Positions 23,818 to 51,828 of a stretch of 64,000 nucleotides of DNA are shown in pieces. The stretch is from positions 217,558-281,557 of the IMG/VR virus record IMGVR_UViG_3300020473_000011. The stretch is one strand, 5' to 3'. The notes under the pieces are model-generated. The model worked only from the letters and a program-made list of their open reading frames with translations, ran no database searches and was not told where the DNA came from. The position numbers and the translations under genes are program-made. Positions within the stretch are counted from its first letter, which is position 1. The number at the start of each line of letters is the position of its first letter.

Positions 23818-23831
23818 TGTCTCACCTCAAC

Positions 23832-25748: not shown

Positions 25749-25936
25749 TGCTCATTTCCTCGTTACTTTAGTCTCAGCACCATTGATACGGCGATACTGC
25801 AATCTCAGGTGTAGTTATGATTGTACAACGGATGTGCAGGCGTTGTACAACGGAGACTATAAAAAACTTACAAGAAGCAACCTAGGGAAAAACTGCACAC
25901 TAGGCCACTTCGTCAATTAATACCTTAAAACGTTCT

Positions 25937-27283: not shown

Positions 27284-27297
27284 TAGTCAGCCCCTTC

Positions 27298-28638
27298 TTA
27301 ATTTCCGCCCGCAGGAATGATGCCCGACACGCCAATGTTGTCTTGCGTCATAATCGCGTTGTTATACCAGCGCATTAAGATGCGTAAGCCCGTATTGTAC
27401 TCACCCGTTGCACGTAAGCCTTTGTAGCGCTTCTTCGTACCGTCTTCGTACATAGATAGCTCGGCGATGCCGTCTTGTGAAATGATGTCTGCTGAGCAGT
27501 AGCCCATCAAATCCATTTCCTCTAAGTACATGTAACGTTGCGTGTTCAAACCAGACGGGATAGTTACAACGTACTCGTAGTTCTCCGTCACGCTGATCTG
27601 TTCAAGCGGGTTGATTAGGGCAACACTATCTCGCGTGTTGATTGTCGCGTCTAAGTCTTCACTTGGACGATGCACGTCTGATTCACGCACTACGAAGTAG
27701 CGTGTCTCATTCAGTGTTTGGTTTTGAATGCCGTACATACAAACAAGCGGCGCGTGGCTCTCTGCTTGGTTGATTAGTGGTGCACCTGAGTCTTTGTCGA
27801 CTAGACGTTGTGCTGCGAACCAGCTGTGACGACAACCTGTATGGTCGTACTGGTCGGTTGCTTCTTCCCAGATAGCTAACATAATACCGTGGTCTGATAC
27901 AGTTAATGCGTAAGACATTGGAATGTTAGGCGTACCCGCAACGGCAACCTGTGCTGTATCAGGGAACTTGTCTTCGAACTCACGCTTTGCATCATATAGT
28001 GGACGACGGCAGAAAAAGCCTTTGTCTTCAATTTCTAGACGTAGCTGGTCGTTAGGGTCACACCACGAAACTTGCTTGTCGATAACGGGAATACGTCGAC
28101 CTAAGAAACCCAGTGTACCTTCAACAACAGGGTCGTCATTCTTGCCGCCTTTGTTCGGTGGCGTGTAGTCATAGAGCTGCCAGTCACCTTGTGCAGGTTT
28201 AAATAACTGTAACGGCGTCGATACGTTAATGTGAAGGTTACCAATCTCTGGTGCCTTATCATTACGGTCTTCACGACGGTTATTATGACTCGGGTGACAT
28301 TGCTTACCTACACCTGAATCAAAGCGAATGATCCATGGTTGCGGTACGACTGATACACCGTGAGTCGCGCGCTCAGGGTCTGCACCTGCTAGGTGGTCTA
28401 CGAAGCCAGTAGCTTCGATAACGAACACCGATGAATCAAACGACAATGGGTCGCTCAGATCAGGGTTGTCCGATGGGTATAAAAGTTTGAAAGCATTCTC
28501 TGATGCCGTAGGGTCATCAGGGTGCTCATAATAATCTGTTAAATCACGGACAACCGACGTAACCAGCGCTTTAAGCGTAGTGAAACCACCACGTTCAATG
28601 CTGTACGGTTGGAAATCCGCTCTCATTTCAAATGCCAT
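27298..28638 (-). CDS. QRPVD-family putative structural protein, B-type (446 aa)
   Basis: PYSIERGGF, PMSYALTVSDHG, QRLVDKDSGAPL, FVVRESDVHRPSE. Confidence 0.75.
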   Translation of the reverse strand: MAFEMRADFQPYSIERGGFTTLKALVTSVVRDLTDYYEHPDDPTASENAFKLLYPSDNPDLSDPLSFDSSVFVIEATGFVDHLAGADPERATHGVSVVPQPWIIRFDSGVGKQCHPSHNNRREDRNDKAPEIGNLHINVSTPLQLFKPAQGDWQLYDYTPPNKGGKNDDPVVEGTLGFLGRRIPVIDKQVSWCDPNDQLRLEIEDKGFFCRRPLYDAKREFEDKFPDTAQVAVAGTPNIPMSYALTVSDHGIMLAIWEEATDQYDHTGCRHSWFAAQRLVDKDSGAPLINQAESHAPLVCMYGIQNQTLNETRYFVVRESDVHRPSEDLDATINTRDSVALINPLEQISVTENYEYVVTIPSGLNTQRYMYLEEMDLMGYCSADIISQDGIAELSMYEDGTKKRYKGLRATGEYNTGLRILMRWYNNAIMTQDNIGVSGIIPAGGN

Positions 28639-28720
28639 AAGTTGTTAACTCCGTCACATCGGCAGCCATTGCTGCGATTAAAAGCCCAGTTACATGTCCG
28701 CGACGAGCGCGGTCTAGCAC

Positions 28721-28732
28721 CATTGTACAATG
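28721..28732. promoter_or_regulatory. Palindromic operator-like site
   Basis: Perfect CATTGTACAATG, paired with a second core at 28757. Confidence 0.7.
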
Positions 28733-28776
28733 AATGTGCAGAGTATTACAGTTTCATTGTACAACCATTGATGCCG

Positions 28777-29673
28777 TTATGCTGTGCGAAACATCACACT
28801 GATCCCCGCGTTGTCTGCCTCAGTACTAACCATACTGTGGTAGATGCGCTGGGAGTTGAAAACTTCCATGTTCAAATTGGCGTTAGCCGATACGAGGTCA
28901 GTATTAGCAAAGCCAATAATGTCGAATACACCCTCGTAGCTAAAGCGCTCCGTAGAGAAATTGTTCGGAAACTGGATTATGTAATCACGGTTCTCCGCAA
29001 TCTCCTTCAACTTAACAGTGTGCATGACACTGTTTCGGTTGTAGACGTAATCAATTGCGGTAGTGGCTGGGGCAGGGACGGGTATATCACTCTCCCGAAC
29101 CAGCAATTGCTTTATGTCAGCTGTAAAACGGTTAAACGTACCACTCAATGCCAGTACAGGGTTGTGTACCGTTGGGATAACAATACCTGTTTCCCAATCG
29201 ACAGGTTTTTGTACGCAAAGCCAACTCAGCTGACGTTCGGGGCTATCCACCACGGCATGCTCCCATATCGCGATAGCAAACCCATGGCTGTCAGCCGTGA
29301 ATAGAAGAGAGAAGGGGCGGTTATACTTGCCGTGGGTACCGAGTCGGTCTCGACGGAACCAGTACCCCAACTCATTCGGCGTGTCTGAGGTATTTAGACT
29401 TCCGACAACCCGTGCGTATAAGTCACCCGTCGTGCTTTCTACCTGCATTGGCGTCGCAATGTTCAAGCGTAAGCGCTGTTCGTCACTCGATAGCTCGAAG
29501 CGAACTACCCACTCTTGGTCGTACGAGTTTACGTCCAAGGCGATTCGAGGCTTCATAAGCAAGACACGACCGTCTTGCTTCTCTATGATCTCAAAATGGT
29601 AGTTGGCCTTCTCTTTGAGAGCTTCAAAAACTTCCCTCAAGTCGACAAGGCCATGTCGGAAAAAGCTAAACAT
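28777..29673 (-). CDS. QRPVD-family putative structural protein, short form (298 aa)
   Basis: NIATPMQ, SWLCVQKPVDWETG, LLVRESDIPVP, FPNNFSTERFSY. Confidence 0.7.
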   Translation of the reverse strand: MFSFFRHGLVDLREVFEALKEKANYHFEIIEKQDGRVLLMKPRIALDVNSYDQEWVVRFELSSDEQRLRLNIATPMQVESTTGDLYARVVGSLNTSDTPNELGYWFRRDRLGTHGKYNRPFSLLFTADSHGFAIAIWEHAVVDSPERQLSWLCVQKPVDWETGIVIPTVHNPVLALSGTFNRFTADIKQLLVRESDIPVPAPATTAIDYVYNRNSVMHTVKLKEIAENRDYIIQFPNNFSTERFSYEGVFDIIGFANTDLVSANANLNMEVFNSQRIYHSMVSTEADNAGISVMFRTA

Positions 29674-29681
29674 GCTCTGCC

Positions 29682-30338
29682 TTACACGCCTGTGAAACCG
29701 TTACCGATTGCGTTCATATCTAGGTTACTCGTGTCGTCTAACGAAAAGGTACTTGAGACTGTTTCCATGCCATCACTGACCATACCAACTGATTCACTTT
29801 CTAGGCCATCAGTGCCACTTGCTTTCTTACCTAGCGACTCAGTCTGCTTCACGGTTGTGAAACCTGCGTCTTTAAGCCCGCTAAGTTGTACTGTAGCCGT
29901 CGCGAAGTCGATGTCGCCTTCACCGTCTTCTTGTGGGAATGACTTGCGCTCAAGCTCGGCGGTAACGCTAAAAGCATCGCTTTCGAACTCAGCGTCAACA
30001 GCTGGGATCAACGTTTCTTCTGCCCACGTTACAAACTCACCTACGAACTCGTCACCGTTAGACTCGCTATTTACTGTCACTTCCCACTCAAGGTCGTCAC
30101 TGTTTAATTGACGTAGTGACGGTGTCAGTGTTGGCCAGTCCCACTTCATCATCGCGTTAAAGCCTTTGATAGTATCAGTTAGAAAGCCCTGAACACGCGA
30201 TACGGTCTCTGTGCCTGCGTCGGTCAGTGTTAGGTTTTCGAGTTCTTCGCCAATATTCGATGAACCGCCACCAATACTTGATGAACCACCACCTACAAGG
30301 GCTTCATAACGTTCTAGGATTGTATTTGCTCGTGTCAT
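29682..30338 (-). CDS. Acidic hypothetical protein
   Basis: Start MTRANTILERYEA, Gly/Ser linker, very D/E-rich. Confidence 0.65.
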   Translation of the reverse strand: MTRANTILERYEALVGGGSSSIGGGSSNIGEELENLTLTDAGTETVSRVQGFLTDTIKGFNAMMKWDWPTLTPSLRQLNSDDLEWEVTVNSESNGDEFVGEFVTWAEETLIPAVDAEFESDAFSVTAELERKSFPQEDGEGDIDFATATVQLSGLKDAGFTTVKQTESLGKKASGTDGLESESVGMVSDGMETVSSTFSLDDTSNLDMNAIGNGFTGV

Positions 30339-30370
30339 TATCACAGTCTCACTTTAGTTGTTGTTTAAGG

Positions 30371-31450
30371 CTACGACATCATTGCCGTTAGCCAGTTACT
30401 TGATTCGTCTTGTACACTACGAACGTGTTCGCGTATCTCTGAACCGTTGATCATGATAAACATGATCGTCCCTGATGTTTCTTGTGCATGGTTGATAACC
30501 GATTTGTACTTACGGGCTATCTGCTCACGAAACACCTTAGAAAATTCTATGTTTTGCATGCTGCCAAACAGACGGGCTTCACTGAATGCGACTAAGTCCA
30601 TTACATGCCTGTAACGGTATCGCCGAGTGTTGAGGTTGTGCGGGAAAAAGACCTTGGCCGTGTTTTCTTCGGTGTAGTAATTCACCTCTGCATCCCAGTG
30701 CGGCATGATGGCATTTTCCATGCGCTTAAACTGCCACGCGGGTTGTGACTTAGTCGGCACCACCACGTCAGATTCACGAACAACAAACTTATTGCGCTTA
30801 TGGCCAAAACCATTTTTTATCTCATAGGCTGCAAAGACAGGTGACATTTCGCTAACTAGTGGCTCACCTGATTCGGGGTCAACTGGGCGCTGTACGCACA
30901 GCCAGCTAAACCATGAACCATCATGCCACACGCTGGCATCATCGAACGTCTCTTCATACGTAAAGAACACAAAGCCTCTGTCGGTAAGCGTTAATACGTA
31001 GCCCATCGGATAAGCAGGCGCTGCTTTGCTTAGGTACGTTCGGTCAATAAATGGAATACCCACATTACCAATGTCACTGCCAATAACACCAACATGATCC
31101 CAGCCGAGCAGCTGTTCGTATTCCCCAAGCACTTCTGTTAAGAACCCCGTATCAGGTAGCTGTAAGTCAGGTGCGACATAGACGCGCGCCTGATCCCATT
31201 CAACCTTAAACATGATACGGTACGAGTACTGCTTACCTGCCAGCATTGCGTTACCCTCGGGCAACACTTCGAGCAGACAAGAGAAGGGGATGTCATCTTC
31301 GAGCAGCTTCGGATGTAGTAGGAAGTCGTTCTCGCCTTGTTGAATAGTTACCGACGTAAATGAGCCAGCCTCGACCATGTCGATGACTAGTTCTTTCATC
31401 ATTGTAACGTGGCTTTTAAAACCGCTACGGTGGAACGAGTAACCTGCCAT
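30371..31450 (-). CDS. QRPVD-family putative structural protein (359 aa)
   Basis: YSFHRSGF, SWLCVQRPVDPESGEPL, FVVRESDVVVP, FPHNLNTRRYRY. Confidence 0.75.
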   Translation of the reverse strand: MAGYSFHRSGFKSHVTMMKELVIDMVEAGSFTSVTIQQGENDFLLHPKLLEDDIPFSCLLEVLPEGNAMLAGKQYSYRIMFKVEWDQARVYVAPDLQLPDTGFLTEVLGEYEQLLGWDHVGVIGSDIGNVGIPFIDRTYLSKAAPAYPMGYVLTLTDRGFVFFTYEETFDDASVWHDGSWFSWLCVQRPVDPESGEPLVSEMSPVFAAYEIKNGFGHKRNKFVVRESDVVVPTKSQPAWQFKRMENAIMPHWDAEVNYYTEENTAKVFFPHNLNTRRYRYRHVMDLVAFSEARLFGSMQNIEFSKVFREQIARKYKSVINHAQETSGTIMFIMINGSEIREHVRSVQDESSNWLTAMMS

Positions 31451-41755: not shown

Positions 41756-43084
41756 TTACGCTGAGCGTTGGTTGAAATCGACAAAGAATCTTTCGAACGC
41801 TGCATGACCTACATACGTTAAGCGTGTCTTGCCCGTACTCACGCCATTATCGTCTAAGTCATCCGATACGTAGAAGACACCCTCCGCGAACTTAATGAAG
41901 GATGGTACGTTATAGCCTCGAATATTTGATGGTGACGTCACCATGTAATACACGCGCTTTTGGTCATCCGTCGTTAGATCAATCGTGATATACAGACCTT
42001 TACCGCGCTCCTGTAAAGCGGCTGCTTCATAGAGTGCCGTGCGCAGTTTGAGACGTAGTGCATCACACTCGGACTCTAGGCTTTTGACATTATCAAGAGC
42101 TGCCTGCTTTAACAGGTTGGAGTAAACCGTACCGATGTCTTGAATGTCGCCATCAGACATTTGCTCTAGGATCTCTTCGCGCTCCGCAGGTGTTAGTTGA
42201 GCAACTTTGGCTGCGGCATCTTCTAAGATTTGCTGGTCAATACCGCCGCCTTTCAGGATCACCTGATCAACGAAGTTGTGTAACCACGGGATTTGAACGC
42301 CTGTCGCAAGCTTGGTTGGTGCTGAAACACCTACGGGGTTGCCATCACCTGTTTTATACAGGTAGCGTACTTGAATGTCATAGTAAACATAACGGTCAAA
42401 AATACCGCCTGCAACGTCGGCTACTTCAAAGTAGCTCGGTGTCGTAGGGTCGTACACATCGCGGTCAACAATAACCTCACGAGCTGACGCCTGTGTAAGA
42501 AGCTTATTCACCACCTCAAAGCGTGGCACTAGCTTATCTGAGACACCCGCCATATCATGCGTAAGGATATTGTACTTGAGCATGTAATGGTCTGTCGGCT
42601 CAACGATTGTCATGTTTGCTAGGTCGGGGGCTGGCACAGCTGAACCGCCTGTCGTGAACGCACCCTCAGTGAAACCAAGTTGCTCGATACCATCTACAAA
42701 CAGTTTTACACCGTAGTAATAGTCCTTACCTGATAGAAGACCATCTACGTACAACGTTTTGTAGTTGTACTTGTCTCCTTCGTCAAACGTGGCCTTATGT
42801 ACGAGCACATTACCCGCAAACTTGTACGGTTGAAGTGTCTTAGCATAGGTTTCATCAAACGAGGTGCCCGCTGCATCCAGCTCATCTTTTGGCGCTACAT
42901 AGATTGCCAAGTATGTTTCAGGTAGTAGGGCTTGGTCTTTTAGGACTTCTCGCAGGGCTTGCTGGCCTTCAAAGCCGATCAGCGTAACACCATGGCGCAT
43001 TAGACCATCGTGCTGAGGCTGTGGGTCAGCCACGGTGGCAACAGGGTTAGATGCGTTTAAGAACGCATTTAAGTCAAAAATCAT
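41756..43084 (-). CDS. FN3/Ig-like + helical protein, paralog 1
   Basis: YLAIYVAP, VDGLLSGKDY, YVYYDIQVRY, IPWLHNFVDQ. Confidence 0.6.
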   Translation of the reverse strand: MIFDLNAFLNASNPVATVADPQPQHDGLMRHGVTLIGFEGQQALREVLKDQALLPETYLAIYVAPKDELDAAGTSFDETYAKTLQPYKFAGNVLVHKATFDEGDKYNYKTLYVDGLLSGKDYYYGVKLFVDGIEQLGFTEGAFTTGGSAVPAPDLANMTIVEPTDHYMLKYNILTHDMAGVSDKLVPRFEVVNKLLTQASAREVIVDRDVYDPTTPSYFEVADVAGGIFDRYVYYDIQVRYLYKTGDGNPVGVSAPTKLATGVQIPWLHNFVDQVILKGGGIDQQILEDAAAKVAQLTPAEREEILEQMSDGDIQDIGTVYSNLLKQAALDNVKSLESECDALRLKLRTALYEAAALQERGKGLYITIDLTTDDQKRVYYMVTSPSNIRGYNVPSFIKFAEGVFYVSDDLDDNGVSTGKTRLTYVGHAAFERFFVDFNQRSA

Positions 43085-43149
43085 TATCCTGTCCTTATCA
43101 AAAAGGGCTGAGCACTATTACCCAGCCACTTAGCAGAATGAGCGTGCGA

Positions 43150-44463
43150 TTACGAGAATACGATTTCCGCACGGTCACGGTACACAGAACCACGCACAGT
43201 TACGTAGAACTTGTCATCCGCGATTTCACTACCTTCAACGACCGCGCCAAGGTGGAACGCTTTGTCTAACCACGAGTAGTAGCTAGTCGGAACGTCTTCG
43301 CGGTAGCCTTGTTTAGTTACAAACGTGAAAGCTTCTTTCAGCTCTGCGTCAGTTAAGTCCAGTAGCTCACCGTAGGTACTATCGATCTCGTTATACAACG
43401 CGATACGACGAAGCTGCTCACGTACTTGCGAGAACTTAATCGCCATTGTCTGGAACTCTTCAACGGCGACATCACGGGTCATGTCGTACATCAGTGTGGC
43501 TACTGATGAGAACGAGCCTGAGTTAAGCGCTTTACGAAGCTCTTCACGAACATCTGCGTCGTCCAGCAAGTTTTGGGCGATGTCGCTTACAAGCGTATCT
43601 TCAACCTGTCGGCCTTGAATAACCGTTTGGTTTACGAAGTCTGCCAACCATGGAAGCATGAACGGTTGAGCGGTTGCCACTACGAAGTCACTTGCTGCGT
43701 CAGGCTTACCAGCTTCTACCTTACGTGCACGGATGCGAATATCGTAGTTCACATACTTACGCATGCCTTCTGTCGTCGGAGAGAACGTGAAAACAGGCTT
43801 ATTCTCTGCGTCAAAGGTAAAGTTTGATGTGATAATAACGGATTCATCGTACGTGTACTCAGGCATTGCTACCTTCGTTGCATCCACAACTTCTAAGACA
43901 AAAGCACTCGTTGAGCTGGTGTCCGCAGTGTCGATAGTAACTTTCATCGAGCTGCCAACTTCTTCCATCTTTAGTGTCACTGTTGGTGGTGCTTCTGTTG
44001 TACCTTCTAACGTGATCGTGTTTGAGGTAGCTAACCAATCAGGTTGAGCTACCTTGTTAAGCACTAGCTCAAAAGCGGCCTTGTATTGATAGCCTGCTGG
44101 TAAGCCCGCTACACTGAACGAGTTATACAAGGCACTGCCGTCTTGTGATTGGATTAAGTCAGTAAGTGGTACGCGGCGATAGACTGCGTTGTCGCTATTG
44201 GTTGCTGTCGTTTTATCGAGGGCACCTACGCCCACCTCTAATGCAGGTACTAGGTACACGCTTAAATACGAGTTGTGAAGGTCTTCTTTAAGCTTCAAGC
44301 CTTCGGTGGCCGCGTACTTGCGGACAGCTTGTAAAAGGAAGTCGCCTGTTGTCGTTGCATTCTCTAGCGTAAACGTAAGGGTGTGCATACCGTGAGCGTT
44401 GACTGACGATGTTGTTGCGTTTACGAAAGTTTCCGCGAAAATTGGGGTCATGGAAAATGCCAT
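43150..44463 (-). CDS. FN3/Ig-like + helical protein, paralog 2
   Basis: YLSVYLVP, VAGLPAGYQY, YVNYDIRIRA, LPWLADFVNQ. Confidence 0.6.
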   Translation of the reverse strand: MAFSMTPIFAETFVNATTSSVNAHGMHTLTFTLENATTTGDFLLQAVRKYAATEGLKLKEDLHNSYLSVYLVPALEVGVGALDKTTATNSDNAVYRRVPLTDLIQSQDGSALYNSFSVAGLPAGYQYKAAFELVLNKVAQPDWLATSNTITLEGTTEAPPTVTLKMEEVGSSMKVTIDTADTSSTSAFVLEVVDATKVAMPEYTYDESVIITSNFTFDAENKPVFTFSPTTEGMRKYVNYDIRIRARKVEAGKPDAASDFVVATAQPFMLPWLADFVNQTVIQGRQVEDTLVSDIAQNLLDDADVREELRKALNSGSFSSVATLMYDMTRDVAVEEFQTMAIKFSQVREQLRRIALYNEIDSTYGELLDLTDAELKEAFTFVTKQGYREDVPTSYYSWLDKAFHLGAVVEGSEIADDKFYVTVRGSVYRDRAEIVFS

Positions 44464-44865
44464 GCTAATAACTCCTAGGATTAAGTTAGGTTATTCGCTG
44501 TCTCATAGCCTTTCACACGACTGGCCTATAGAACCTGCCGTGGGCATTCTCATGTCTCGTTTGAGAAGGTGGGACTTCTCGGGATCGTCTAAAGTTTAAT
44601 TCTACAACGAATTATAACGTTGTACAAAGCTTAGCTGTGGCTCAACGATGTTAAAGGCTGTACCACAGACACACGACCCGATGCACTACGCCTGCGAAGT
44701 ATCACAGGCATTGAAGGACGCTTAGGGGTGCCTTTCTTAGCAGTTAACGCTAAGGTTGCTGCCAGTGGCGTTGCCGTGGCAACACTCACAGGCATGAAGC
44801 TAACGAAGGTACCTATTAGGCCAAACAGTAAGCTTGTCACTGCGGCCTTAATGCGTGATATGCGA

Positions 44866-45039
44866 TTAATCGTCATCAGCACAACCACATGTATTGTTGC
44901 AAACACACACGTCGCCACATGGCTCGACATCTGGCTTAGTGGCGGTTTTACGTTGACGACTAGCTAGTACCTTATCATCAATTACTTTGTCTAAGTCAGC
45001 TAGTACTGTTGCAATACGTGTCATCGCTGGTTGATTCAT
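44866..45039 (-). CDS. Micro-protein with Cys-rich tail
   Basis: GAGGA RBS; ends CGDVCVCNNTCGCADDD. Confidence 0.5.
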   Translation of the reverse strand: MNQPAMTRIATVLADLDKVIDDKVLASRQRKTATKPDVEPCGDVCVCNNTCGCADDD

Positions 45040-45093
45040 CGCGCAATCCTCGTTAAATTGGTTGTACAATGATTATAACTTAATCACTTGCTA

Positions 45094-45408
45094 TTACGCT
45101 AGACCTTCGTACACTTCCAAATTAAATGTCACGTCGGTTACATGCTTAGCATCTTTCCAAGCTGACACTGTTGCCAACTGCGCCTTAACATCGTCGCTAG
45201 CTGCATCGGCTAACATTAGCAGCTCTTTATCGCCCATGATCAAGTCATGTGCGCGTCCTGTTACATCACGGTTAGTTAGACCTGAAATCAAGCTTAGTAC
45301 TTCATTTAGGTGTTCTTCTGGTGGGTAGGTTTTATCAATTACTGATGTAATAGCTGGTACACTAAACGGTACGATCACTTTATTCTCAGGGAATATTGAT
45401 GCTGTCAT
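45094..45408 (-). CDS. Hypothetical protein
   Basis: ORF track, leader motif upstream. Confidence 0.6.
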   Translation of the reverse strand: MTASIFPENKVIVPFSVPAITSVIDKTYPPEEHLNEVLSLISGLTNRDVTGRAHDLIMGDKELLMLADAASDDVKAQLATVSAWKDAKHVTDVTFNLEVYEGLA

Positions 45409-45528
45409 TATTATCTCACTTTTTCATTGTCTCAATTAAGGGCGCTGCCAATAAAAAAGAGGCAGCCCGCACCATTGAGTATACAATGGTTAGGGCTGCC
45501 TAGACAGTCTAAAGATACGATTAATCGC

Positions 45529-46068
45529 CTAGCACAGTAAGTTTATTAAAGCTGACCGTTCGTGCTCTGAAAGCACGGTGCTAGGTGTATCTCGCAGAGG
45601 CAAGCTCTCGAAAAGAGCTGTACTCTCGTCATCAATGAACCAGCAAAAGTTGCCGACCTCAGATTCGACGATGACCGCAAAGTCCCCCATGTACTCACAA
45701 CGATACGCCTTGTCTTCAAAGCGTTTAATAAACTCTAACAGTAAACTGTCTCGGTCACGTACAAGCAAGGTGACGGCTTGTCGTAACTGTAGGATCGTGT
45801 GATTAGCACGGGTGCGTAACTCTTCACTCCGCTGTAGCGAGGCTTCTACCTCGGGCAAACTAGCGGCTTCTAATACGCGTTGCATGATTGAATAATCGCG
45901 ACTAGCGGGTGACCAGTCGAAACCCAGCTTATCCAATGCGGCCTTTAGTGCTTCTTTCGCATAACTCGCCTCATCCCGTAACATTCCATTTGTGTATTCA
46001 AGACGTTTAACCTCATTAAAGAGATTGGCTGCGTTGGACAGTCCGACGTTTGAAGGATGTTGAGCCAT
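45529..46068 (-). CDS. Hypothetical coiled-coil protein
   Basis: GGAGG RBS. Confidence 0.6.
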   Translation of the reverse strand: MAQHPSNVGLSNAANLFNEVKRLEYTNGMLRDEASYAKEALKAALDKLGFDWSPASRDYSIMQRVLEAASLPEVEASLQRSEELRTRANHTILQLRQAVTLLVRDRDSLLLEFIKRFEDKAYRCEYMGDFAVIVESEVGNFCWFIDDESTALFESLPLRDTPSTVLSEHERSALINLLC

Positions 46069-46229
46069 GTGACCTCCGTTATATGTGAACTTCTCGCATT
46101 CACATCACGCAGTAACGCACTGTCTCAGTCAGTTAGTAAGTCGTATGGCGACAGCCTGCGCACTCGTTAACAAAGACTGATTCCCTTTGTTTTTCGCAAT
46201 TTCACACAGACTCAAATTCGTAAGAAAAG

Positions 46230-46256
46230 TATGCCGACTCAGAAACAGTCGGCATA
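46230..46256 (-). terminator. Terminator after the hfq-like operon
   Basis: TATGCCGACT-cagaaac-AGTCGGCATA with T-tract on the minus strand. Confidence 0.7.
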
Positions 46257-46277
46257 TAACATTGAAAGTGTAACATA

Positions 46278-46664
46278 CTATTCCAATGCCAAGATAGCTA
46301 TTAAGTTAGACGGGTCAGTTTTATTGGCATCAAGGATTGCATTGCGCTCACGTGACCACGGCATGCAGCACCCTTTGCTAATTTGACAGGCAGCCTTTGT
46401 GGCCTCTTGGTGGGCGATCTCACAGCTATAAAGTTGGTGACCACTCTGGATTTTTGTATGTTCAGCTAAATGACGGCACTGGGTGCCCTCATCATTTAAC
46501 TCGCCCACTGGGCATAAGTTTGATCGACAACACCCGCCACTTCGGATGCACTTGAAGTAGTAAGTGTCGCCGACGACATTAAGCAGACCATGGTTGGCCT
46601 GCCAGTCTAGTTCGTCCTTCGAGGGTGACCACAGCTCTGAGGTAATGTTACCTGACTGTGTCAT
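46278..46664 (-). CDS. Cys-rich metal-cluster protein (YkgJ-like)
   Basis: CIRSGGCC...CP...CRHL...CEI...C...GCC. Confidence 0.5.
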   Translation of the reverse strand: MTQSGNITSELWSPSKDELDWQANHGLLNVVGDTYYFKCIRSGGCCRSNLCPVGELNDEGTQCRHLAEHTKIQSGHQLYSCEIAHQEATKAACQISKGCCMPWSRERNAILDANKTDPSNLIAILALE

Positions 46665-46893
46665 TTGTTTTACCTAGGTATGCTTCACTGCAAATACTTA
46701 GGATCTTATTGCGGTCGATTAGTGTACACGCGTTATTCTGGCCATGTAAGTCTAACATTAGTGATTGGTCATCAAACTCATTGATGTAGCCCGTAAGGCT
46801 AATGTTATTGTCTAGATACACGCGCAGTAGCTTACGTGAATCTTTCCAGTCTTTTAAAGCACGCTTTCTTAAATTTGAATTGTCGGTAAACAT
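46648..46893 (-). CDS. hfq: Divergent Hfq/LSm-fold RNA chaperone
   Basis: LRVYLDNNISLTGYINEFD aligns to Sm1 VSIYLVNGIKLQGQIESFD; TLIDRNKILSI aligns to Sm2 QMVYKHAISTV. Confidence 0.72.
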   Translation of the reverse strand: MFTDNSNLRKRALKDWKDSRKLLRVYLDNNISLTGYINEFDDQSLMLDLHGQNNACTLIDRNKILSICSEAYLGKTNDTVR

Positions 46894-46903
46894 TACTCTT
46901 CAC

Positions 46904-47425
46904 TCATTGGATTTTATTAAATACATTTTTAACCGCAGCTTTCAGCCCACTGAATAGCCCTAGGTTTTCTGGATGTTCGTTTATGGCCAGCCCTGACTCA
47001 CCGTTCCACACAAGCTTGCTATCACTCTCTGATAGCACATCATTCTCGTACATGACTATGTGCGTAGGCACTTCTAGCTCACCTGCCAAAAAGTGAATGG
47101 CACGCTCCGTTAGCTGGTAATGGCCAATGCCCTTATCTGAGCGCTTGATCAAACCCCAAAAACGCAACTTGGTTGCATCGCCACGGATCGCCGAATTACA
47201 GTCGGCTAGCTTGAGCACATTTTCAAGATGAAATGCTGTGTGAACTGACCCACTCGTATACTCGTGTAACAAGCGTAAAGCTTGGATCATCGACGGGTTC
47301 AGTGCACGCTTATAGGCGCGCTTCGTTGTGTAACAACAAGGACAGGTCGTTTTTAAATCAGCATCAAACTCTGAATACATTTTCGATTGAGCATCAGCTA
47401 CTGTCATTTCAGTTTCGGTGGTCAT
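46904..47425 (-). CDS. Hypothetical protein with CPCC motif, possible winged-helix
   Basis: AGGAG RBS before MTTETE; TCPCC; LRFWGLI..YQLTERA. Confidence 0.6.
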   Translation of the reverse strand: MTTETEMTVADAQSKMYSEFDADLKTTCPCCYTTKRAYKRALNPSMIQALRLLHEYTSGSVHTAFHLENVLKLADCNSAIRGDATKLRFWGLIKRSDKGIGHYQLTERAIHFLAGELEVPTHIVMYENDVLSESDSKLVWNGESGLAINEHPENLGLFSGLKAAVKNVFNKIQ

Positions 47426-47435
47426 CAATACGCTC

Positions 47436-47888
47436 CTAAATCTCGCCGCTACACCACGACTTTTTCTTTCCGCCGTAGTACTCATAGGCTAACCCTGCGT
47501 CAATTAACGCATTTGATAGCAGCACACCATCGACTTTTACGTCCGCTAAAATACGGAAATACTTATCGCGTTGAAGGTTGTGAAGGGTGATCTGGCCACG
47601 CTGTACGAACTGCTGAGTAAACGCTTTAGCTTCATCGCCTAGCGTATCTTCTCTCGCACACTCGTAGCCACGGATCTCAGGGGTATCAACACCGTTAACA
47701 CGGATATTAATTTCATGACCGATAATAGCTGGCCAGCCCTTGATATTTAGTTTGATGGTGTCCCCGTCGTAAACGGAAACTAGCTCAATCACACCAACCG
47801 ATTGCTCGTAGGTTTTTGCGTGCGCCGCAGGGGCTAGGCTAATTGATGCCGTTGCAAATAGGGCAGTCGCTAGGTGGCGTAAACTCAT
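47436..47888 (-). CDS. Thermonuclease (SNase) family protein with signal peptide
   Basis: VYDGDTI, IRVNGVDTPE, DKYFRILADV, LIDAGLA. Confidence 0.88.
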   Translation of the reverse strand: MSLRHLATALFATASISLAPAAHAKTYEQSVGVIELVSVYDGDTIKLNIKGWPAIIGHEINIRVNGVDTPEIRGYECAREDTLGDEAKAFTQQFVQRGQITLHNLQRDKYFRILADVKVDGVLLSNALIDAGLAYEYYGGKKKSWCSGEI

Positions 47889-48023
47889 CGTCTCTATCTC
47901 ACTATCTCACAGTCTCAAACGCGCAATGGTGCGCACTCAGCATTGTACAATACATTTTAGTGCCTTGTACAATGTTTTGTACTATACTGCGGTTCTGAGA
48001 TTTTGAGAATTTTAGGGGCAAAT

Positions 48024-48566
48024 ATGTACGCTGTCATACATGACACCTACTACCGTGACACACCTGAGCGTATACAGCTAAGTGGCATGGTTTCACTTAA
48101 AGATGATTGCAGATTCATGATCACAGCTGATTACAAAGCTGGGCATGCGCCTGATGAAGCTGGCGATTCACGCAGGCCGCCAATGAGTGCCACTATTGTA
48201 TTTAGTGGTGAAGAACTTAAAGACCTGTTGTTAAATAAGCGCTATACGGAAGCTGTGCCATTAAAACCCGATGATATTCGCGAAACCCTATTGAAGTGTG
48301 CCCACGTATCAACCACGGGCAAGCGATGGGATAACCTGCACCTTACAATTGGCGAAATAACGCGTAGTAGCGTTATGCTGGTGTTGCGCGCAAATGTGTT
48401 GTCTAACGAAGTTATGACACTCGCGCTACCACTAGGTGTGCTCGATGAGCTACTTAGCTCAACTATCTACTTAGAGAAAAATCAGCGTGTTCGTGAACTG
48501 GTACTCACGTGGCCAACGGTTAACTACCGTAACTTACTCAAGGCAACGGCTACGACTCTCGGCTAA
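48024..48566 (+). CDS. Hypothetical protein
   Basis: AGGGG RBS before MYAVIH. Confidence 0.6.
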   Translation: MYAVIHDTYYRDTPERIQLSGMVSLKDDCRFMITADYKAGHAPDEAGDSRRPPMSATIVFSGEELKDLLLNKRYTEAVPLKPDDIRETLLKCAHVSTTGKRWDNLHLTIGEITRSSVMLVLRANVLSNEVMTLALPLGVLDELLSSTIYLEKNQRVRELVLTWPTVNYRNLLKATATTLG

Positions 48567-48864
48567 ACAATCCACCTCGCTTTAGCTTTCGTCCGCGTTC
48601 GACAATTAGTTCGATAAGCTCGATCAAGACGTCAACATGACAAGCCTGATGCTTCTTACAAAAGCAGCCTAGTCGTTTACCTTGCAGGCGATGCAGCTGC
48701 TTTACTAGGTGTGGTTGGCTGAGTATGTGGTCGCGATAGAGTTTTAGTACCTGCTGTCGCGTCAGGCCATTCTTTATTCGAAAGGGATTGCCCCATTTAC
48801 TGGGGCGGTGAACAGGTATGTCACACTGCTCTGTGAGTACGTTAACGCGTGTGGTTTTATTCAT
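48550..48864 (-). CDS. DUF4326-family protein
   Basis: RPSKWGNPF, LQGKRLGCFC..ACHVDVL. Confidence 0.8.
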   Translation of the reverse strand: MNKTTRVNVLTEQCDIPVHRPSKWGNPFRIKNGLTRQQVLKLYRDHILSQPHLVKQLHRLQGKRLGCFCKKHQACHVDVLIELIELIVERGRKLKRGGLFSRES

Positions 48865-49259
48865 TACCTTAGTTTTAGTATCTCAGGATTTGCAAGCTTG
48901 TCACGCGCTATCGTTAGGTCGTTCCCACCGTCTGCATTTGATGACGTTGGCAAGTCCCAGTAACAAAGCCCTTTGCGTACCAGTGCATTCGCTGTATTAA
49001 TGGTTGCGCGGCGTGACCAGCCCATAGAAAACGAAAGATGGTCGCTGTTTTCGCTATCTTTTTGCAGTATAACAAAGAGCAACATTAGTTGGTTTTCATT
49101 CAGTGATGAAAAGGTTTCCATTGTGTAAGCCGTAGGGAACGCATCAAGATAGCGGGCACTCCGCTCATCGAGGTTTTCTTTCTTGTCCCCGAAACATAGT
49201 TTCTCAAGGATTATTTCTTCTATGCGCTCAGCGCTATTAATTTTCATGATTATCTCCAT
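48864..49259 (-). CDS. Hypothetical protein
   Basis: Operonic 1-nt overlap. Confidence 0.55.
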   Translation of the reverse strand: MEIIMKINSAERIEEIILEKLCFGDKKENLDERSARYLDAFPTAYTMETFSSLNENQLMLLFVILQKDSENSDHLSFSMGWSRRATINTANALVRKGLCYWDLPTSSNADGGNDLTIARDKLANPEILKLR

Positions 49260-49422
49260 CTAGACTTTCGTCCCAAATCATAACGTCGCTGCCGCAACAG
49301 GACGTCTCCCAACCTTCGTCAGTACCGACGGGCTGCGTTTTACCGCAACCGCCGACACATTGAAAGTTTTGCCCCTTGGCTAAAAGGGGCAGTGGCGCTA
49401 GCTCTGCCAGTTCTGATGACAT
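49237..49422 (-). CDS. Small Cys-containing protein
   Basis: CVGGCG...SCCG. Confidence 0.45.
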   Translation of the reverse strand: MSSELAELAPLPLLAKGQNFQCVGGCGKTQPVGTDEGWETSCCGSDVMIWDESLDGDNHEN

Positions 49423-50462
49423 GTTAGTACCCATTCTTTTACTTGGTCGTCAGACAACGACGCGACATATTCGCTCACTGGCATACCTACGGTGCTTTGT
49501 GCGACTTCGCGCATATAACCCATAAACACGCCAAGGCTTTTGCCTGCTGTGCCAGTCCACTCCCTTACCTTCTCAGCACTGTAGCGAGCTTTAACGCGCT
49601 TACGTTCGGCATCACGTACTTCCCGCATAGCGGCATGATCTGCCAGTAGGCGCTTATAGCGCTCGCCAAACTCAGGGAACACCTTAAAAGCACGTGTTAA
49701 CTGTTCTTGTGGTGTCGGAAGTGAATCGACATCAACTTGGACGCCTTTCTCTACCAATGTCTTCCACATCTGCTTGTAACTATCACGCTTGTTATCGCGA
49801 GACCGTGCACGATGGTTACGATTCTCTGTGTTAAAGAAGTTAGGCTGTAAATACGGTGTAGACATCGCATAGTCGATAACTTCTTCAAGCGTGTCGAAGC
49901 CTTTTGCAAAGCGCTCGTAGTCAAAGCCCAAAAACTCTAGCACTGCCTTTGTGTCTGAGCTGACAACCATCTTTTCGATACGCACGGCACTGTTATCAGG
50001 ATCCATCAAGGTATACGTTAAGCCTTTATGGCCATAAGCAAAGCCCATGCTATCCGCAGTACGACCAACGAAGTTACCAAGGTCGTTATAGCTGTAGTAG
50101 CTCAGTGCTGAATCAAAGTGCTCAGACGGCATGAAGATCAAGTCAACTTGAAGTTCACCGAAACCACCTAGTGACCACGTCTGTGTCTCTGGGTTGAAGT
50201 TCTCAGACTTTGACTTAGGGCGAACTAACTCGGTGACACCTAACTGGTCAAGGTTATTTAATACGCGCTCTAGGGCGTTGTTATCTTCTACAAGCAAGTC
50301 TAAGTCGCCAAAGCTTTCCTTGTTACGGTAGTATGGTACGACCTCGATACGGCAATCAGGAAGCACCTGTGCTAATTTGCTCTTAACGTCAGCTGCTAAT
50401 GCCACAAACTCAGCTGCAAGATAGCGACGTGTCTTTGTTTCTAATAATGCCTTACCACCCAT
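49398..50462 (-). CDS. Pol-beta-superfamily nucleotidyltransferase-like protein
   Basis: KESFGDLDLLV (G-D-h-D) and LQVDLIF third acidic residue. Confidence 0.6.
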   Translation of the reverse strand: MGGKALLETKTRRYLAAEFVALAADVKSKLAQVLPDCRIEVVPYYRNKESFGDLDLLVEDNNALERVLNNLDQLGVTELVRPKSKSENFNPETQTWSLGGFGELQVDLIFMPSEHFDSALSYYSYNDLGNFVGRTADSMGFAYGHKGLTYTLMDPDNSAVRIEKMVVSSDTKAVLEFLGFDYERFAKGFDTLEEVIDYAMSTPYLQPNFFNTENRNHRARSRDNKRDSYKQMWKTLVEKGVQVDVDSLPTPQEQLTRAFKVFPEFGERYKRLLADHAAMREVRDAERKRVKARYSAEKVREWTGTAGKSLGVFMGYMREVAQSTVGMPVSEYVASLSDDQVKEWVLTCHQNWQS

Positions 50463-50475
50463 TACGGACTCCTAT

Positions 50476-51828
50476 TTATCGGGTAAAGTTTTGGTCTAAA
50501 AGCGTTGTTTTTAGTAGTGCGCAACGCCAGTTCTTTTGTGCCCTTTTGATAGCCACTCGACGTCGTTTCTTGATTTCTAGGCCAACTTCGATCCCTTTAA
50601 GACCGAGAGAACCTACGTCATCAATCACTGTGTAAGTGGCTGCCTCATGCACCGCCGCCATTATGTCAGCCTGATAGTAGTACACGCGCTCAAAGGTCGG
50701 GCGACCCTGTGCGTCGGCCTCACAGACTAGTAACATTTGTTTGAAGCGCTTTGGTTTCGCTAGCGCCTTGGTTTCTTCCAATAGTTTCAATAGCGCTTTG
50801 TCATTCATCGCGCTGCAAGTGTGAATTTGCGTGTGATGCTTAGCTGTCATCATCGCAAGGTCACGGTATTCATTCGGTATACGTAGTCGTGCTGCCATAT
50901 CTTTAATGATATAGGCACCACGTGGCTCATGCTTTGTATGTCCCTGCATCGGGTTTGTATAAACCGTCGGGACTCTCAAGCGCTGAGCAAGCTCCTGTAA
51001 GTGCTCAGGTAACTCATAGAGGTAAGGGCGTGTTCTGGCCTTACCTAGGTCATGGCAAAGTGCTGCAAAGCGTACGACAGGGTCTGACGTTAATTCACAG
51101 CATCTTTCAAGTACCAAAAGTGTGTGTATGCCCGAGTCAATCTCAGGGTGAAAGTCTGCACGCTGTGGCATACCAAAGAGTGCATCAATCTCAGGCAGTA
51201 CGATAGCTAAGGCTCCGCACTGGCGTAAGACTTCAAAGTAGACCGTTGGCGTCTCTGTCGCAAGGGCTTTCTGTGTCTCTTTCCATACGCGTTCTGGTGT
51301 TAAATGTTCGAGGTCACCGTTCTCGGCCATAAGCGTCATGACGTTCATTGTCTCGTCAGCAACGGTAAAGCCTAGGTGTGCAAAGCGTGCTGCAAAGCGT
51401 GCCGTGCGTAATACCCGTAGAGGATCGTCAAAGTATGCCGAAGATGTGTGACGAAGCACCTTATCTCTGATGTCGCGCATAGCATCTAGCGGGTCAATAA
51501 CTTCATCGTTGACTGCATCGTAAGCCATCGCGTTGATGGTTAGGTCACGTCTACATAAGTCTGACTCTAAACCTACATCAGGGGAGAAGTCGACTTTAAA
51601 GCCCTTATGGCCTGCGGCCACCTTGTATTCAGTACGCGCGAGGGCAAACTCTTCGCCATTTTCGGGATGAAGAAAGACAGGGAAATCTTTGCCGACTTGC
51701 TTAAAGCCATGTTCAAGCATTTGCTCTGGTGTAGCACCGACGACAACCCAATCTCTATCAGAGACAGGTAATCCCAGTAATTTGTCACGGACAGCACCGC
51801 CGACTAAATAGGCTTCCATTGTACTCAC
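50476..51828 (-). CDS. cca: Multifunctional CCA tRNA nucleotidyltransferase with HD phosphatase domain
   Basis: YLVGGAVRD, DRDWVV, VGKDFPVFLHP, ALARTE, RRDLTINAMA, DPLRVLR, HPEIDSGIHT, LCHDLGK. Confidence 0.95.
   Translation of the reverse strand: MSTMEAYLVGGAVRDKLLGLPVSDRDWVVVGATPEQMLEHGFKQVGKDFPVFLHPENGEEFALARTEYKVAAGHKGFKVDFSPDVGLESDLCRRDLTINAMAYDAVNDEVIDPLDAMRDIRDKVLRHTSSAYFDDPLRVLRTARFAARFAHLGFTVADETMNVMTLMAENGDLEHLTPERVWKETQKALATETPTVYFEVLRQCGALAIVLPEIDALFGMPQRADFHPEIDSGIHTLLVLERCCELTSDPVVRFAALCHDLGKARTRPYLYELPEHLQELAQRLRVPTVYTNPMQGHTKHEPRGAYIIKDMAARLRIPNEYRDLAMMTAKHHTQIHTCSAMNDKALLKLLEETKALAKPKRFKQMLLVCEADAQGRPTFERVYYYQADIMAAVHEAATYTVIDDVGSLGLKGIEVGLEIKKRRRVAIKRAQKNWRCALLKTTLLDQNFTR

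What the first reader, a model, noticed from the sequence alone, without database searches (positions are those of the whole stretch)
46648..46893. Phage-encoded Hfq-like protein with a rewired proximal RNA-binding face
Seen: Sm1/Sm2 hydrophobic core aligns to E. coli Hfq and keeps Y25, N28, G34, F39, D40. By my alignment Q8>R, F42>Q, Y55>D, K56>R, H57>N, G29>N, K31>S. Established: Q8/F42/K56/H57 form the proximal U-tail pocket, Y25/G29/K31 the distal A-rich face, and Hfq is a homohexamer. Inference: this could be a dominant-negative or specificity-switching subunit that mixes with host Hfq to blunt sRNA regulation (in vibrios Hfq sRNAs control quorum sensing), or a chaperone for phage RNAs.
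Basis: partly seen in the sequence, partly recalled or inferred. Interest (0 to 1): 0.8.

Follow-up and report, generated by a model that had tools for sequence, protein, structure and literature searches.

The report
Divergent Hfq-like protein of a marine jumbo phage
A huge uncultured marine phage carries a real, conserved gene for a distant relative of the bacterial RNA chaperone Hfq. Its usual pocket for small-RNA tails has decayed while its opposite RNA-binding face is strictly kept, so it probably binds RNA differently from host Hfq; nothing shows that it poisons host Hfq.

Summary
Window 46648-46893 (-) is an 81-aa ORF with an Hfq-type Sm fold. Pfam Hfq gives E 8e-5, below the curated cut-off. 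A family profile matches solved Hfq structures at E 7e-10, and all of the 50 best-scoring (listed) Foldseek PDB matches are Hfq.

The gene is real. It has four orthologues at 61-74% identity, and synonymous sites are saturated while pN is 0.06-0.26. It keeps the same gene order in five phage lineages. Marine metatranscriptome contigs cover it.

Conservation within the family sharpens the picture. The positions matching E. coli F39, F42 and H57 are three of only six hypervariable core columns, so the uridine pocket has decayed rather than been rebuilt. All ten distal-face columns are invariant, and five are identical to E. coli.

My best reading is a self-assembling phage Sm ring that binds purine-rich RNA through its distal face and basic helix. 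That mechanism is inferred, not shown. Mixing with host Hfq is untested and looks unlikely from the replaced interface residues. The Vibrio host is unsupported; the only cultured link is Pseudoalteromonas umbrosa. I rate it a new variant of a known kind, of moderate interest.

The parts
46648..46893 (-). CDS of the 81-aa divergent Hfq-like (Sm fold) protein. Predicted alpha1 8-18, beta1 22-27, beta2 32-40, beta3 44-49, beta4 56-60, beta5 64-69. Conserved C-terminal AYLGK tail (71-75).
   Evidence: Purifying selection. ATG lies 10 nt after the upstream stop, with a GAAGAG Shine-Dalgarno-like spacer.
46904..47425 (-). Upstream gene p173 (the longest ORF runs to 47485, 193 aa). Phage protein of unknown function, phrog_2693, with CxCC and a winged-helix-like look. 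Same operon.
   Evidence: phrog_2693, E 2.7e-11. (called as 173 aa on identical contigs). (viral clusters; weak winged-HTH structural neighbours).
47436..47888 (-). First gene of the operon: staphylococcal-nuclease-like protein (150 aa) with a signal-peptide-like N-terminus.
   Evidence: PF00565, E 6.9e-11. (phrog_452 endonuclease). Sequence.
46278..46664 (-). Downstream gene p128. It overlaps the Hfq-like stop by 17 nt, which suggests translational coupling. Nine invariant cysteines (C-x5-CC-x4-C ... C-x5-CC). Function unknown.
   Evidence: Overlap or abutment is kept in L001, L014 and L016. YkgJ/CxxCxxCC likeness is a lead only. The AF2 model is unusable, pLDDT 44.7.
46230..46256 (-). Terminator-like hairpin with a perfect 10-bp stem and a T-rich tail, 22 nt after the p128 stop. 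Likely end of the operon.
48009..48037 (-). Sigma-70-like promoter match (ATGACA-17-TAAAAT) upstream of the nuclease gene. Two weaker matches lie at 48009-47981 and 47971-47942.
   Evidence: the number of matches in the region is no higher than in shuffles, so this is weak. RNA-library contigs of two runs both end at 47996.

Best explanation
Shown:
- The ORF is a genuine gene under purifying selection in an uncultured marine jumbo phage; identical copies sit on contigs of up to 419 kb.
- It encodes a very divergent member of the Hfq branch of the Sm superfamily.
- It is the third gene of a four-gene block: exported SNase-like nuclease, p173, Hfq-like, Cys-rich p128. This order is kept in five phage lineages, and marine metatranscriptome contigs cover the gene.
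- The residues that make the canonical proximal uridine/3'-end pocket of Hfq are replaced. Q8>R and K56>R are fixed. Q41 is acidic. F39, F42 and H57 are free to vary.
- The distal-face purine pocket (Y25, L26, N28, I30, L32, T61>S) and the beta4/beta5 edge strands are invariant.

Inferred mechanism:
- The protein assembles into its own Sm ring, probably hexameric.
- It no longer docks the U-rich 3' tails of sRNAs.
- It binds single-stranded purine/A-rich RNA through its distal face, helped by the very basic N-terminal helix (R9 K10 R11 K14 K17 R20 K21 R24).
- During infection it would act as a phage-specific RNA-binding protein on A-rich leaders or tails of phage or host transcripts. It would change their translation or stability without taking part in classical sRNA-mRNA matchmaking.
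For: - Fold and homology.
- Real gene: four orthologues at 61-74% identity. pS is 0.75-1.07 (saturated) against pN 0.06-0.26.
- Synteny in the window, L001, L012, L014 and L016.
- RNA-library contigs of 1334 and 1374 nt span 46663/46623-47996 with uneven depth, while a DNA run is flat.
- Residue mapping.
- Conservation pattern: 10 of 10 distal columns are invariant against 35 of 65 in the core (hypergeometric P about 1e-3). The F39, F42 and H57 columns are 3 of the 6 columns with four or more residue types among 70 (P about 4e-4).
- Roles of Q8, Q41, F42, K56 and H57 (proximal) and of Y25, L26, N28, I30, Q52 and T61 (distal) are as reviewed in PMC10628458.
- Operon signals.
Against: - No binding, oligomer or expression experiment exists. 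The RNA-library contigs cannot formally exclude DNA carry-over.
- The family has only five sequences, so the conservation statistics are thin. Beta2 (distal) columns are also structural core.
- G29>N and K31>S hit two classic distal-face positions, and Q52>T removes an adenine contact. A-rich binding may therefore be altered or lost as well.
- Net charge is about zero (K+R 10, D+E 10) against +4 for the E. coli core. Rim residues R17 and K47 are acidic here. Both argue for weaker general RNA affinity.
- The Sm2 alignment is less certain than Sm1.
Confidence: 0.45

Rival explanations
1. The phage subunit co-assembles with host Hfq into mixed hexamers and poisons or re-specifies them (dominant negative).
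For: It has the same fold and the same beta4/beta5 edge-strand way of assembling. Loss of the proximal pocket would make any mixed ring defective for sRNA 3' ends.
Against: Identity to Hfq is only 20-26%. Interface-lining Sm2/beta5 positions are replaced by family-specific invariant residues (Y55>D60, A58>K63, S60>L65, H57 variable), and a 4-5 residue insertion precedes beta4. That pattern fits a co-evolved self-interface.
Confidence: 0.08
2. Competitive decoy without mixing. A homomeric phage ring keeps distal-type binding to A-rich mRNA sites or poly(A) tails but offers no sRNA dock. It would compete with host Hfq and blunt host sRNA regulation, or protect phage mRNAs from it.
For: Distal face invariant and half identical to E. 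coli; proximal pocket degenerate. This is a special case of the best explanation with a defined target.
Against: No evidence on targets. Distal changes G29>N, K31>S and Q52>T may change specificity. Charge is near neutral.
Confidence: 0.15
3. Protein-binding adaptor rather than RNA binder. This would resemble cyanobacterial Hfq, whose function depends on docking to a Cys-rich zinc-finger-like domain of PilB1. Here the partner could be the translationally coupled Cys-rich p128 or a host protein.
For: - ESM feature search puts cyanobacterial Hfq_1 clusters first (score 0.92).
- The net charge is neutral and the rim is acidic.
- The C-terminal AYLGK tail beyond beta5 is invariant.
- The overlap with a gene for a protein with nine invariant cysteines is conserved.
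- Cyanobacterial Hfq-PilB1 docking is described in PMC4390875.
Against: The window protein does not hit PF21979 or NF047718. The family profile prefers canonical Hfqs in the PDB, and no cyanobacterial Hfq chain appears among the 38 listed matches (all Hfq rows are named only 'Hfq', without organism). The basic helix and conserved distal pocket still look like RNA-binding surfaces. The atlas score is in a range reached by chance in 4-10% of shuffles.
Confidence: 0.2
4. Chance ORF or decaying remnant with no function.
For: It scores below the curated Pfam and TIGRFAM cut-offs.
Against: Saturated synonymous change with low non-synonymous change across five lineages. Conserved synteny and coupling. 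A confident fold. Presence in RNA libraries.
Confidence: 0.02

Closest known systems
Bacterial RNA chaperone Hfq (Pfam PF17209, TIGR02383; e.g. E. coli, A. aeolicus 5SZD, C. crescentus 6GWK)
   Same: - Sm fold with an N-terminal helix.
- Sm1 motif residues Y25, L26, N28, I30, L32, G34 and D40.
- Size of about 80 aa.
- Distal purine-pocket residues.
- Best sequence and structure matches.
   Different: - Below the curated family cut-offs.
- The Sm2 motif YKHA is DR[NVAD]K.
- Proximal pocket: Q8>R, Q41>D/E, F42 and H57 variable.
- Rim R17 and K47 are acidic.
- A 4-5 residue insertion in the beta3-beta4 loop.
- A short conserved AYLGK tail instead of a long disordered C-terminal domain.
- Encoded by a phage.
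Cyanobacterial Hfq-related proteins (PF21979 Hfq_1 / NF047718; Synechocystis Hfq that docks on PilB1)
   Same: An Hfq fold with a non-canonical proximal site. Function depends on a protein partner with a Cys-rich domain (PMC4390875). Nearest clusters by language-model features.
   Different: The window protein gives no profile hit to these models. It comes from a different lineage. The partner is unknown.
Phage Sm/Hfq-like proteins (Pfam PF23874 Phage_Hfq; mycobacteriophage Tonenili and Phabba 'Hfq-like domain' proteins, Adephagia gp39, Pseudomonas phage nickie protein)
   Same: Small phage-encoded Sm-fold proteins with no tested function (PMC11373665).
   Different: Identity is only 11-18%, with Foldseek E 1e-4 to 1e-3. 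The window protein does not hit PF23874. By sequence it is closer to bacterial Hfq than to these.
Tandem two-Sm Hfq-like protein P0007 (152 aa, metagenomic contig L013)
   Same: The nearest relative outside the five orthologues (E 1.9e-4; 26-33% identity per domain). It is likewise degenerate at proximal positions.
   Different: Two fused Sm domains. It keeps V27, K31 and partly Y55/H57. It sits beside a ribosome hibernation factor gene, and its context is not known to be phage.

Membership tests
Hfq (PF17209 / TIGR02383) | Sm fold: N-terminal alpha-helix followed by five strongly bent beta-strands | tested here: met
   AF2 model with core pLDDT 92-95: H8-18, E22-27, E32-40, E44-49, E56-60, E64-69. 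All of the 50 best-scoring (listed) PDB matches are Hfq. An independent ESM model agrees.
Hfq (PF17209 / TIGR02383) | Score at or above the curated family cut-off | tested here: not met
   PF17209 22.6 bits against 27. TIGR02383 25.1 against 61.7. NF001602 18.3 against 95. Orthologues P0003-P0005 carry a precomputed PF17209 hit, and the best member reaches E 1e-10.
Hfq (PF17209 / TIGR02383) | Sm1 motif (Y25, N28, G34, D40 and hydrophobic core) | tested here: met
   Y26, L27, N29, I31, L33, G35 and D41 are invariant in the family.
Hfq (PF17209 / TIGR02383) | Sm2 motif [Y/F]KHA in the beta4-beta5 turn | tested here: not met
   D60-R61-[N/V/V/A/D]62-K63. hhalign does not align this half.
Hfq (PF17209 / TIGR02383) | Proximal uridine/3'-end pocket: Q8, Q41, F42, K56, H57 | tested here: not met
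   R9, D/E42, Q/T/G/A/S43, R61, N/V/V/A/D62. Columns 40, 43 and 62 are among the 6 most variable of 70.
Hfq (PF17209 / TIGR02383) | Distal purine (A-R-N) pocket: Y25, L26, N28, G29, I30, K31, L32, Q52, T61 | tested here: inconclusive
   Y, L, N, I and L are identical and T61 is S. But G29>N, K31>S, Q33>T and Q52>T. All ten columns are invariant in the family.
Hfq (PF17209 / TIGR02383) | Homohexameric ring | not testable with these tools
   Only single-chain prediction was available. The beta4/beta5 edge strands are invariant, which is compatible with oligomerisation but no proof of it.
Hfq (PF17209 / TIGR02383) | Binds RNA and promotes sRNA-mRNA pairing | not testable with these tools
   Needs biochemistry.
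Phage_Hfq (PF23874) | Profile match | tested here: not met
   No hit for the window protein at E<=10. One of seven alignment members hits at E 0.002.
Cyanobacterial Hfq_1 (PF21979 / NF047718) | Profile match | tested here: not met
   No hit for the window protein. One of seven members hits at 5e-4 / 2e-4. The likeness comes from language-model features only.

The most novel reading that the evidence does not exclude
The protein is a phage counter-measure against the host's Hfq network. It would be a ring that keeps the mRNA-type (distal) binding surface but has discarded the sRNA dock. It would then either out-compete host Hfq on A-rich mRNA sites or, less likely, co-assemble with it. Either way it would switch off host sRNA regulation during infection, which would make it the first viral anti-Hfq built from Hfq itself.
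Probability: 0.15. Interest if true: 0.8.

Novelty: new variant of a known kind. Interest (0 to 1): 0.5.

Why it matters
Hfq is the central hub of small-RNA regulation in many bacteria. How large phages deal with that hub is almost unexplored.

Sequence-detectable Hfq homologues are very rare in sequenced phages. A tblastn search with E. coli Hfq against 50,697 phage records found only one plausible phage hit besides mislabelled bacterial contigs. No paper in the searched library uses the phrases 'phage Hfq', 'viral Hfq' or 'phage-encoded Hfq', and related searches turned up only Hfq-like annotations of phage proteins (Adephagia gp39), not a functional study.

This family is a natural separation-of-function variant: proximal pocket lost, distal face kept. 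It could show what the distal face does on its own, and whether phages use Sm rings to control RNA. A relative sits in a cultured Pseudoalteromonas umbrosa isolate assembly, so the question may be testable at the bench.

Tried and rejected
- Nearest phages: megablast of 6 kb and tblastn of the protein against 50,697 phage records found no relative. Only a chance 22-aa match to a Clostridium phage appeared.
- PHROGs gave no meaningful family for the protein.
- P0006, a 3847-aa hit from the exhaustive search, is a spurious match to a repeated NEGDDATFTVTLSG-type unit, not an Sm domain.
- Scans of viral, genome and metagenome contigs added only identical copies and the P. umbrosa relative, so the family stays at five lineages.
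- The last homologue search was swamped by enterobacterial Hfqs. It served only to deepen the AF2 alignment.
- The AF2 model of the coupled neighbour p128 was unusable at pLDDT 44.7, so no fold search was run on it.
- Pfam found nothing for p173, p128, p179 or p104.
- Rfam found no known RNA family anywhere in the window, and ARAGORN found no tRNA.
- Host assignment to Vibrio: I found nothing to support it. GC is 46-49% and uninformative.
- Hetero- or homo-oligomer prediction was not possible, because only unmodified single chains can be folded here.

Full report
**What is there**

Window 46648..46893 (minus strand) is an 81-aa ORF. Its ATG lies 10 nt after the TGA of the upstream gene, behind a purine-rich GTGAAGAGTA spacer. 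Its last 17 nt overlap the start of the next gene.

By itself the protein matches Pfam Hfq (PF17209) at E 8e-5 and 22.6 bits, under the gathering score of 27. It matches TIGR02383 at 25.1 bits against a cut-off of 61.7. phmmer against PDB sequences gives only weak Hfq hits, E 0.01-0.2. PHROGs gives nothing useful.

**Relatives**

Word-indexed and exhaustive protein searches find a very small family.
- Four orthologues at 61-74% identity: P0002 to P0005.
- One 152-aa protein with two tandem Sm domains: P0007.
- One spurious repeat-protein hit: P0006.

P0005 is named 'RNA chaperone Hfq' by NCBI. It lies on a 202.6-kb contig of a Pseudoalteromonas umbrosa B95 assembly. Scans of viral, genome and metagenome contig collections added only identical copies.

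A profile of the family against PDB sequences puts Hfq chains at the top, E 7e-10 to 1e-7, aligned over residues 4-71. hhalign of the five orthologues against canonical Hfqs gives 93.7% probability and E 1.9e-7, but aligns only columns 1-53, the Sm1 half.

**Fold**

AF2 was run with an alignment that included canonical Hfqs. It gives mean pLDDT 84 and 92-95 in the core, with alpha1 (8-18) and five strands.

Foldseek against the PDB returns Hfq for all of its 50 best-scoring (listed) matches: TM 0.8-0.93 by target, rmsd 1.3-3.3 Å, 22-28% identity. An independent single-sequence ESM Atlas model has Hfq/Hfq_1 clusters as its structural neighbours, TM 0.83-0.88.

**Is it a real gene?**

- Across the five lineages, synonymous sites are saturated (pS 0.75-1.07) while pN is 0.06-0.26.
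- The order SNase-like nuclease, p173, Hfq-like, Cys-rich p128, p179, p104 is kept in all five.
- The Hfq-like gene is about as conserved as its neighbours: 59-74% against 57-91%.
- Sigma-70-like promoter matches lie upstream of the nuclease gene, though no more of them than in shuffled sequence. A perfect 10-bp hairpin with a T-rich tail follows p128.
- Two marine metatranscriptome runs hold contigs of 1334 and 1374 nt spanning 46663/46623-47996. That is nuclease + p173 + Hfq-like, with uneven depth along the region. A DNA run covers the region flat. This suggests transcription, although the tool warns that DNA carry-over cannot be excluded.

**Genome context**

The window is part of a very large phage.
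- It has five tail-sheath paralogues and an integrase-like gene.
- It has a 3108-aa ORF whose first 1000 aa have no match in the phage collection.
- It has a CCA-adding/PolyA_pol-family enzyme, a Pol-beta-like nucleotidyltransferase, RNase H and thymidylate synthase.
- Contigs carrying the identical protein reach 419 kb, and IMG/VR lists a 281-kb viral contig.
- The closest cultured phages are jumbo phages of Pseudomonas, Erwinia and Yersinia, at only 26-28% identity in the sheath protein.
- The sequence turns up in many marine and seawater metagenomes.

I found nothing that ties it to Vibrio. The only isolate link for the clade is Pseudoalteromonas.

**Residue mapping**

I used E. coli Hfq taken from NC_000913.3. 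MAFFT, the HMMER profile alignment and the predicted strands agree. E. coli residue n corresponds to phage residue n+1 up to residue 49. A 4-5 residue insertion (GQNN) then lies in the beta3-beta4 loop, and Y55-K56-H57-A58 correspond to D60-R61-N62-K63.

- Kept: Y25, N28, G34, F39, D40.
- Changed: Q8>R, G29>N, K31>S, F42>Q, Y55>D, K56>R, H57>N.

I also found Q41>D/E, rim R17>D and K47>D/E, and Q52>T. The roles of Q8, Q41, F42, K56 and H57 (proximal) and of Y25, L26, N28, I30, Q52 and T61 (distal) are as summarised in PMC10628458.

**What family conservation adds**

Among the 70 ungapped core columns of the five orthologues, 40 are invariant and only six hold four or more residue types. Three of those six are the columns matching E. 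coli F39 (F/S/Y/H/H), F42 (Q/T/G/A/S) and H57 (N/V/V/A/D). The chance of that is about 4e-4.

So the uridine-stacking and 3'-end-reading positions are not re-specified. They are unconstrained. 'Rewired' is better read as 'abandoned', with a few new fixed charges around the pore (R9, D60, R61, K63).

By contrast all ten distal-face columns are invariant, P about 1e-3 against the core background. Five are identical to E. coli (Y25, L26, N28, I30, L32) and T61 is conservatively S. The beta4 and beta5 edge strands (TLID, LSICS) and a C-terminal AYLGK tail are invariant too.

Caveats: there are only five sequences, and beta2 is also structural core.

**Most likely mechanism (inferred)**

I propose a self-assembling phage Sm ring that has lost the sRNA 3'-tail dock. 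It would keep a distal-type purine-binding surface plus a very basic N-terminal helix, and so bind A/purine-rich single-stranded RNA of phage or host transcripts.

Points against this:
- G29>N, K31>S and Q52>T touch classic distal positions.
- Net charge is about zero, against +4 for the E. coli core.
- Two rim positions are acidic.

**Rival explanations**

1. Mixed rings with host Hfq. This is untested. It looks unlikely because interface-lining Sm2/beta5 residues are replaced by family-specific invariants and identity is only about 20-26%.
2. A decoy that competes with host Hfq for A-rich sites without mixing.
3. A protein adaptor like cyanobacterial Hfq, which docks on a Cys-rich domain of PilB1 (PMC4390875). 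This is suggested by the language-model neighbours, the conserved tail, and the translationally coupled protein with nine invariant cysteines. The window protein does not hit the cyanobacterial models, however.
4. A functionless ORF, which contradicts.

**Comparison with what is known**

The protein belongs to the Hfq branch of the Sm superfamily by fold and Sm1 motif. It fails the curated cut-offs, the Sm2 motif and the proximal pocket, so I do not file it as an Hfq equivalog.

Small Sm/Hfq-like proteins are already annotated in phages: Pfam PF23874 Phage_Hfq, mycobacteriophage 'Hfq-like domain' proteins, and Adephagia gp39. They are only 11-18% identical to this one, and the window protein does not hit that model.

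Canonical Hfq homologues are nearly absent from 50,697 phage records. I found no functional study of a phage Hfq in the searched library.

**Verdict**

Observation: confirmed. Interpretation: partly supported. This is a new variant of a known kind and is of moderate interest. The interest would be high if the anti-Hfq reading were shown.

Noticed in passing
window 22597-31450 (-): Five paralogous genes all match the tail-sheath family phrog_12249: 22597-23817, 23832-25748, 25937-27283, 27298-28638 and 30371-31450. The nearest cultured phages (Pseudomonas Lu11, Erwinia pEa_SNUABM phages, Yersinia fHe-Yen9-02) are only 26-28% identical.
   Followed up: partly
window 13052-22378 (-): A 3108-aa ORF. 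Its first 1000 residues have no tblastn match in 50,697 phage records.
   Followed up: partly
window 10571-11842 (-): A tyrosine-integrase-like gene (phrog_1, E 9e-29) inside what looks like a 280-420 kb jumbo phage.
   Followed up: no
window 47436-47888 (-): The SNase-like nuclease that heads the operon has a signal-peptide-like N-terminus (…SLAPAAHA/KT…). It is probably exported, so the operon mixes exported and cytoplasmic products.
   Followed up: no
window 49398-51828 (-): A CCA-adding/PolyA_pol-family enzyme with an HD domain (50476-51828) lies next to a Pol-beta-like nucleotidyltransferase (49398-50462), about 3 kb from the Hfq-like gene. ARAGORN finds no tRNA gene in the window.
   Followed up: partly
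L012 (Pseudoalteromonas umbrosa B95, NZ_JASJUU010000009.1, 202.6 kb): An isolate assembly holds a contig with the same gene block at 59-79% protein identity. A related jumbo phage seems to be carried by, or co-cultured with, a cultivable host.
   Followed up: partly
L013:361-819: P0007 is a 152-aa protein made of two tandem Hfq-like Sm domains with different, degenerate Sm2 motifs (YLH and MKS). It lies beside a ribosome hibernation factor (Ribosomal_S30AE) gene on a 4.5-kb metagenomic contig.
   Followed up: partly
window 46278-46664 (-): p128 has nine invariant cysteines (C-x5-CC-x4-C … C-x5-CC) across five lineages and is translationally coupled to the Hfq-like gene. Its likeness to YkgJ/CxxCxxCC is weak, and the AF2 model failed.
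   Followed up: partly
window 41756-44463 (-): The adjacent 442-aa and 437-aa proteins are distant paralogues, about 22% identical. Neither has a Pfam or PHROG match.
   Followed up: no
window 44001-49900: The region is present at over 99% identity in several marine and seawater metagenomes from different studies and in two metatranscriptome runs. A 2025 run (X8) carries a variant with about 20 substitutions and a 1-nt insertion at 48014.
   Followed up: no
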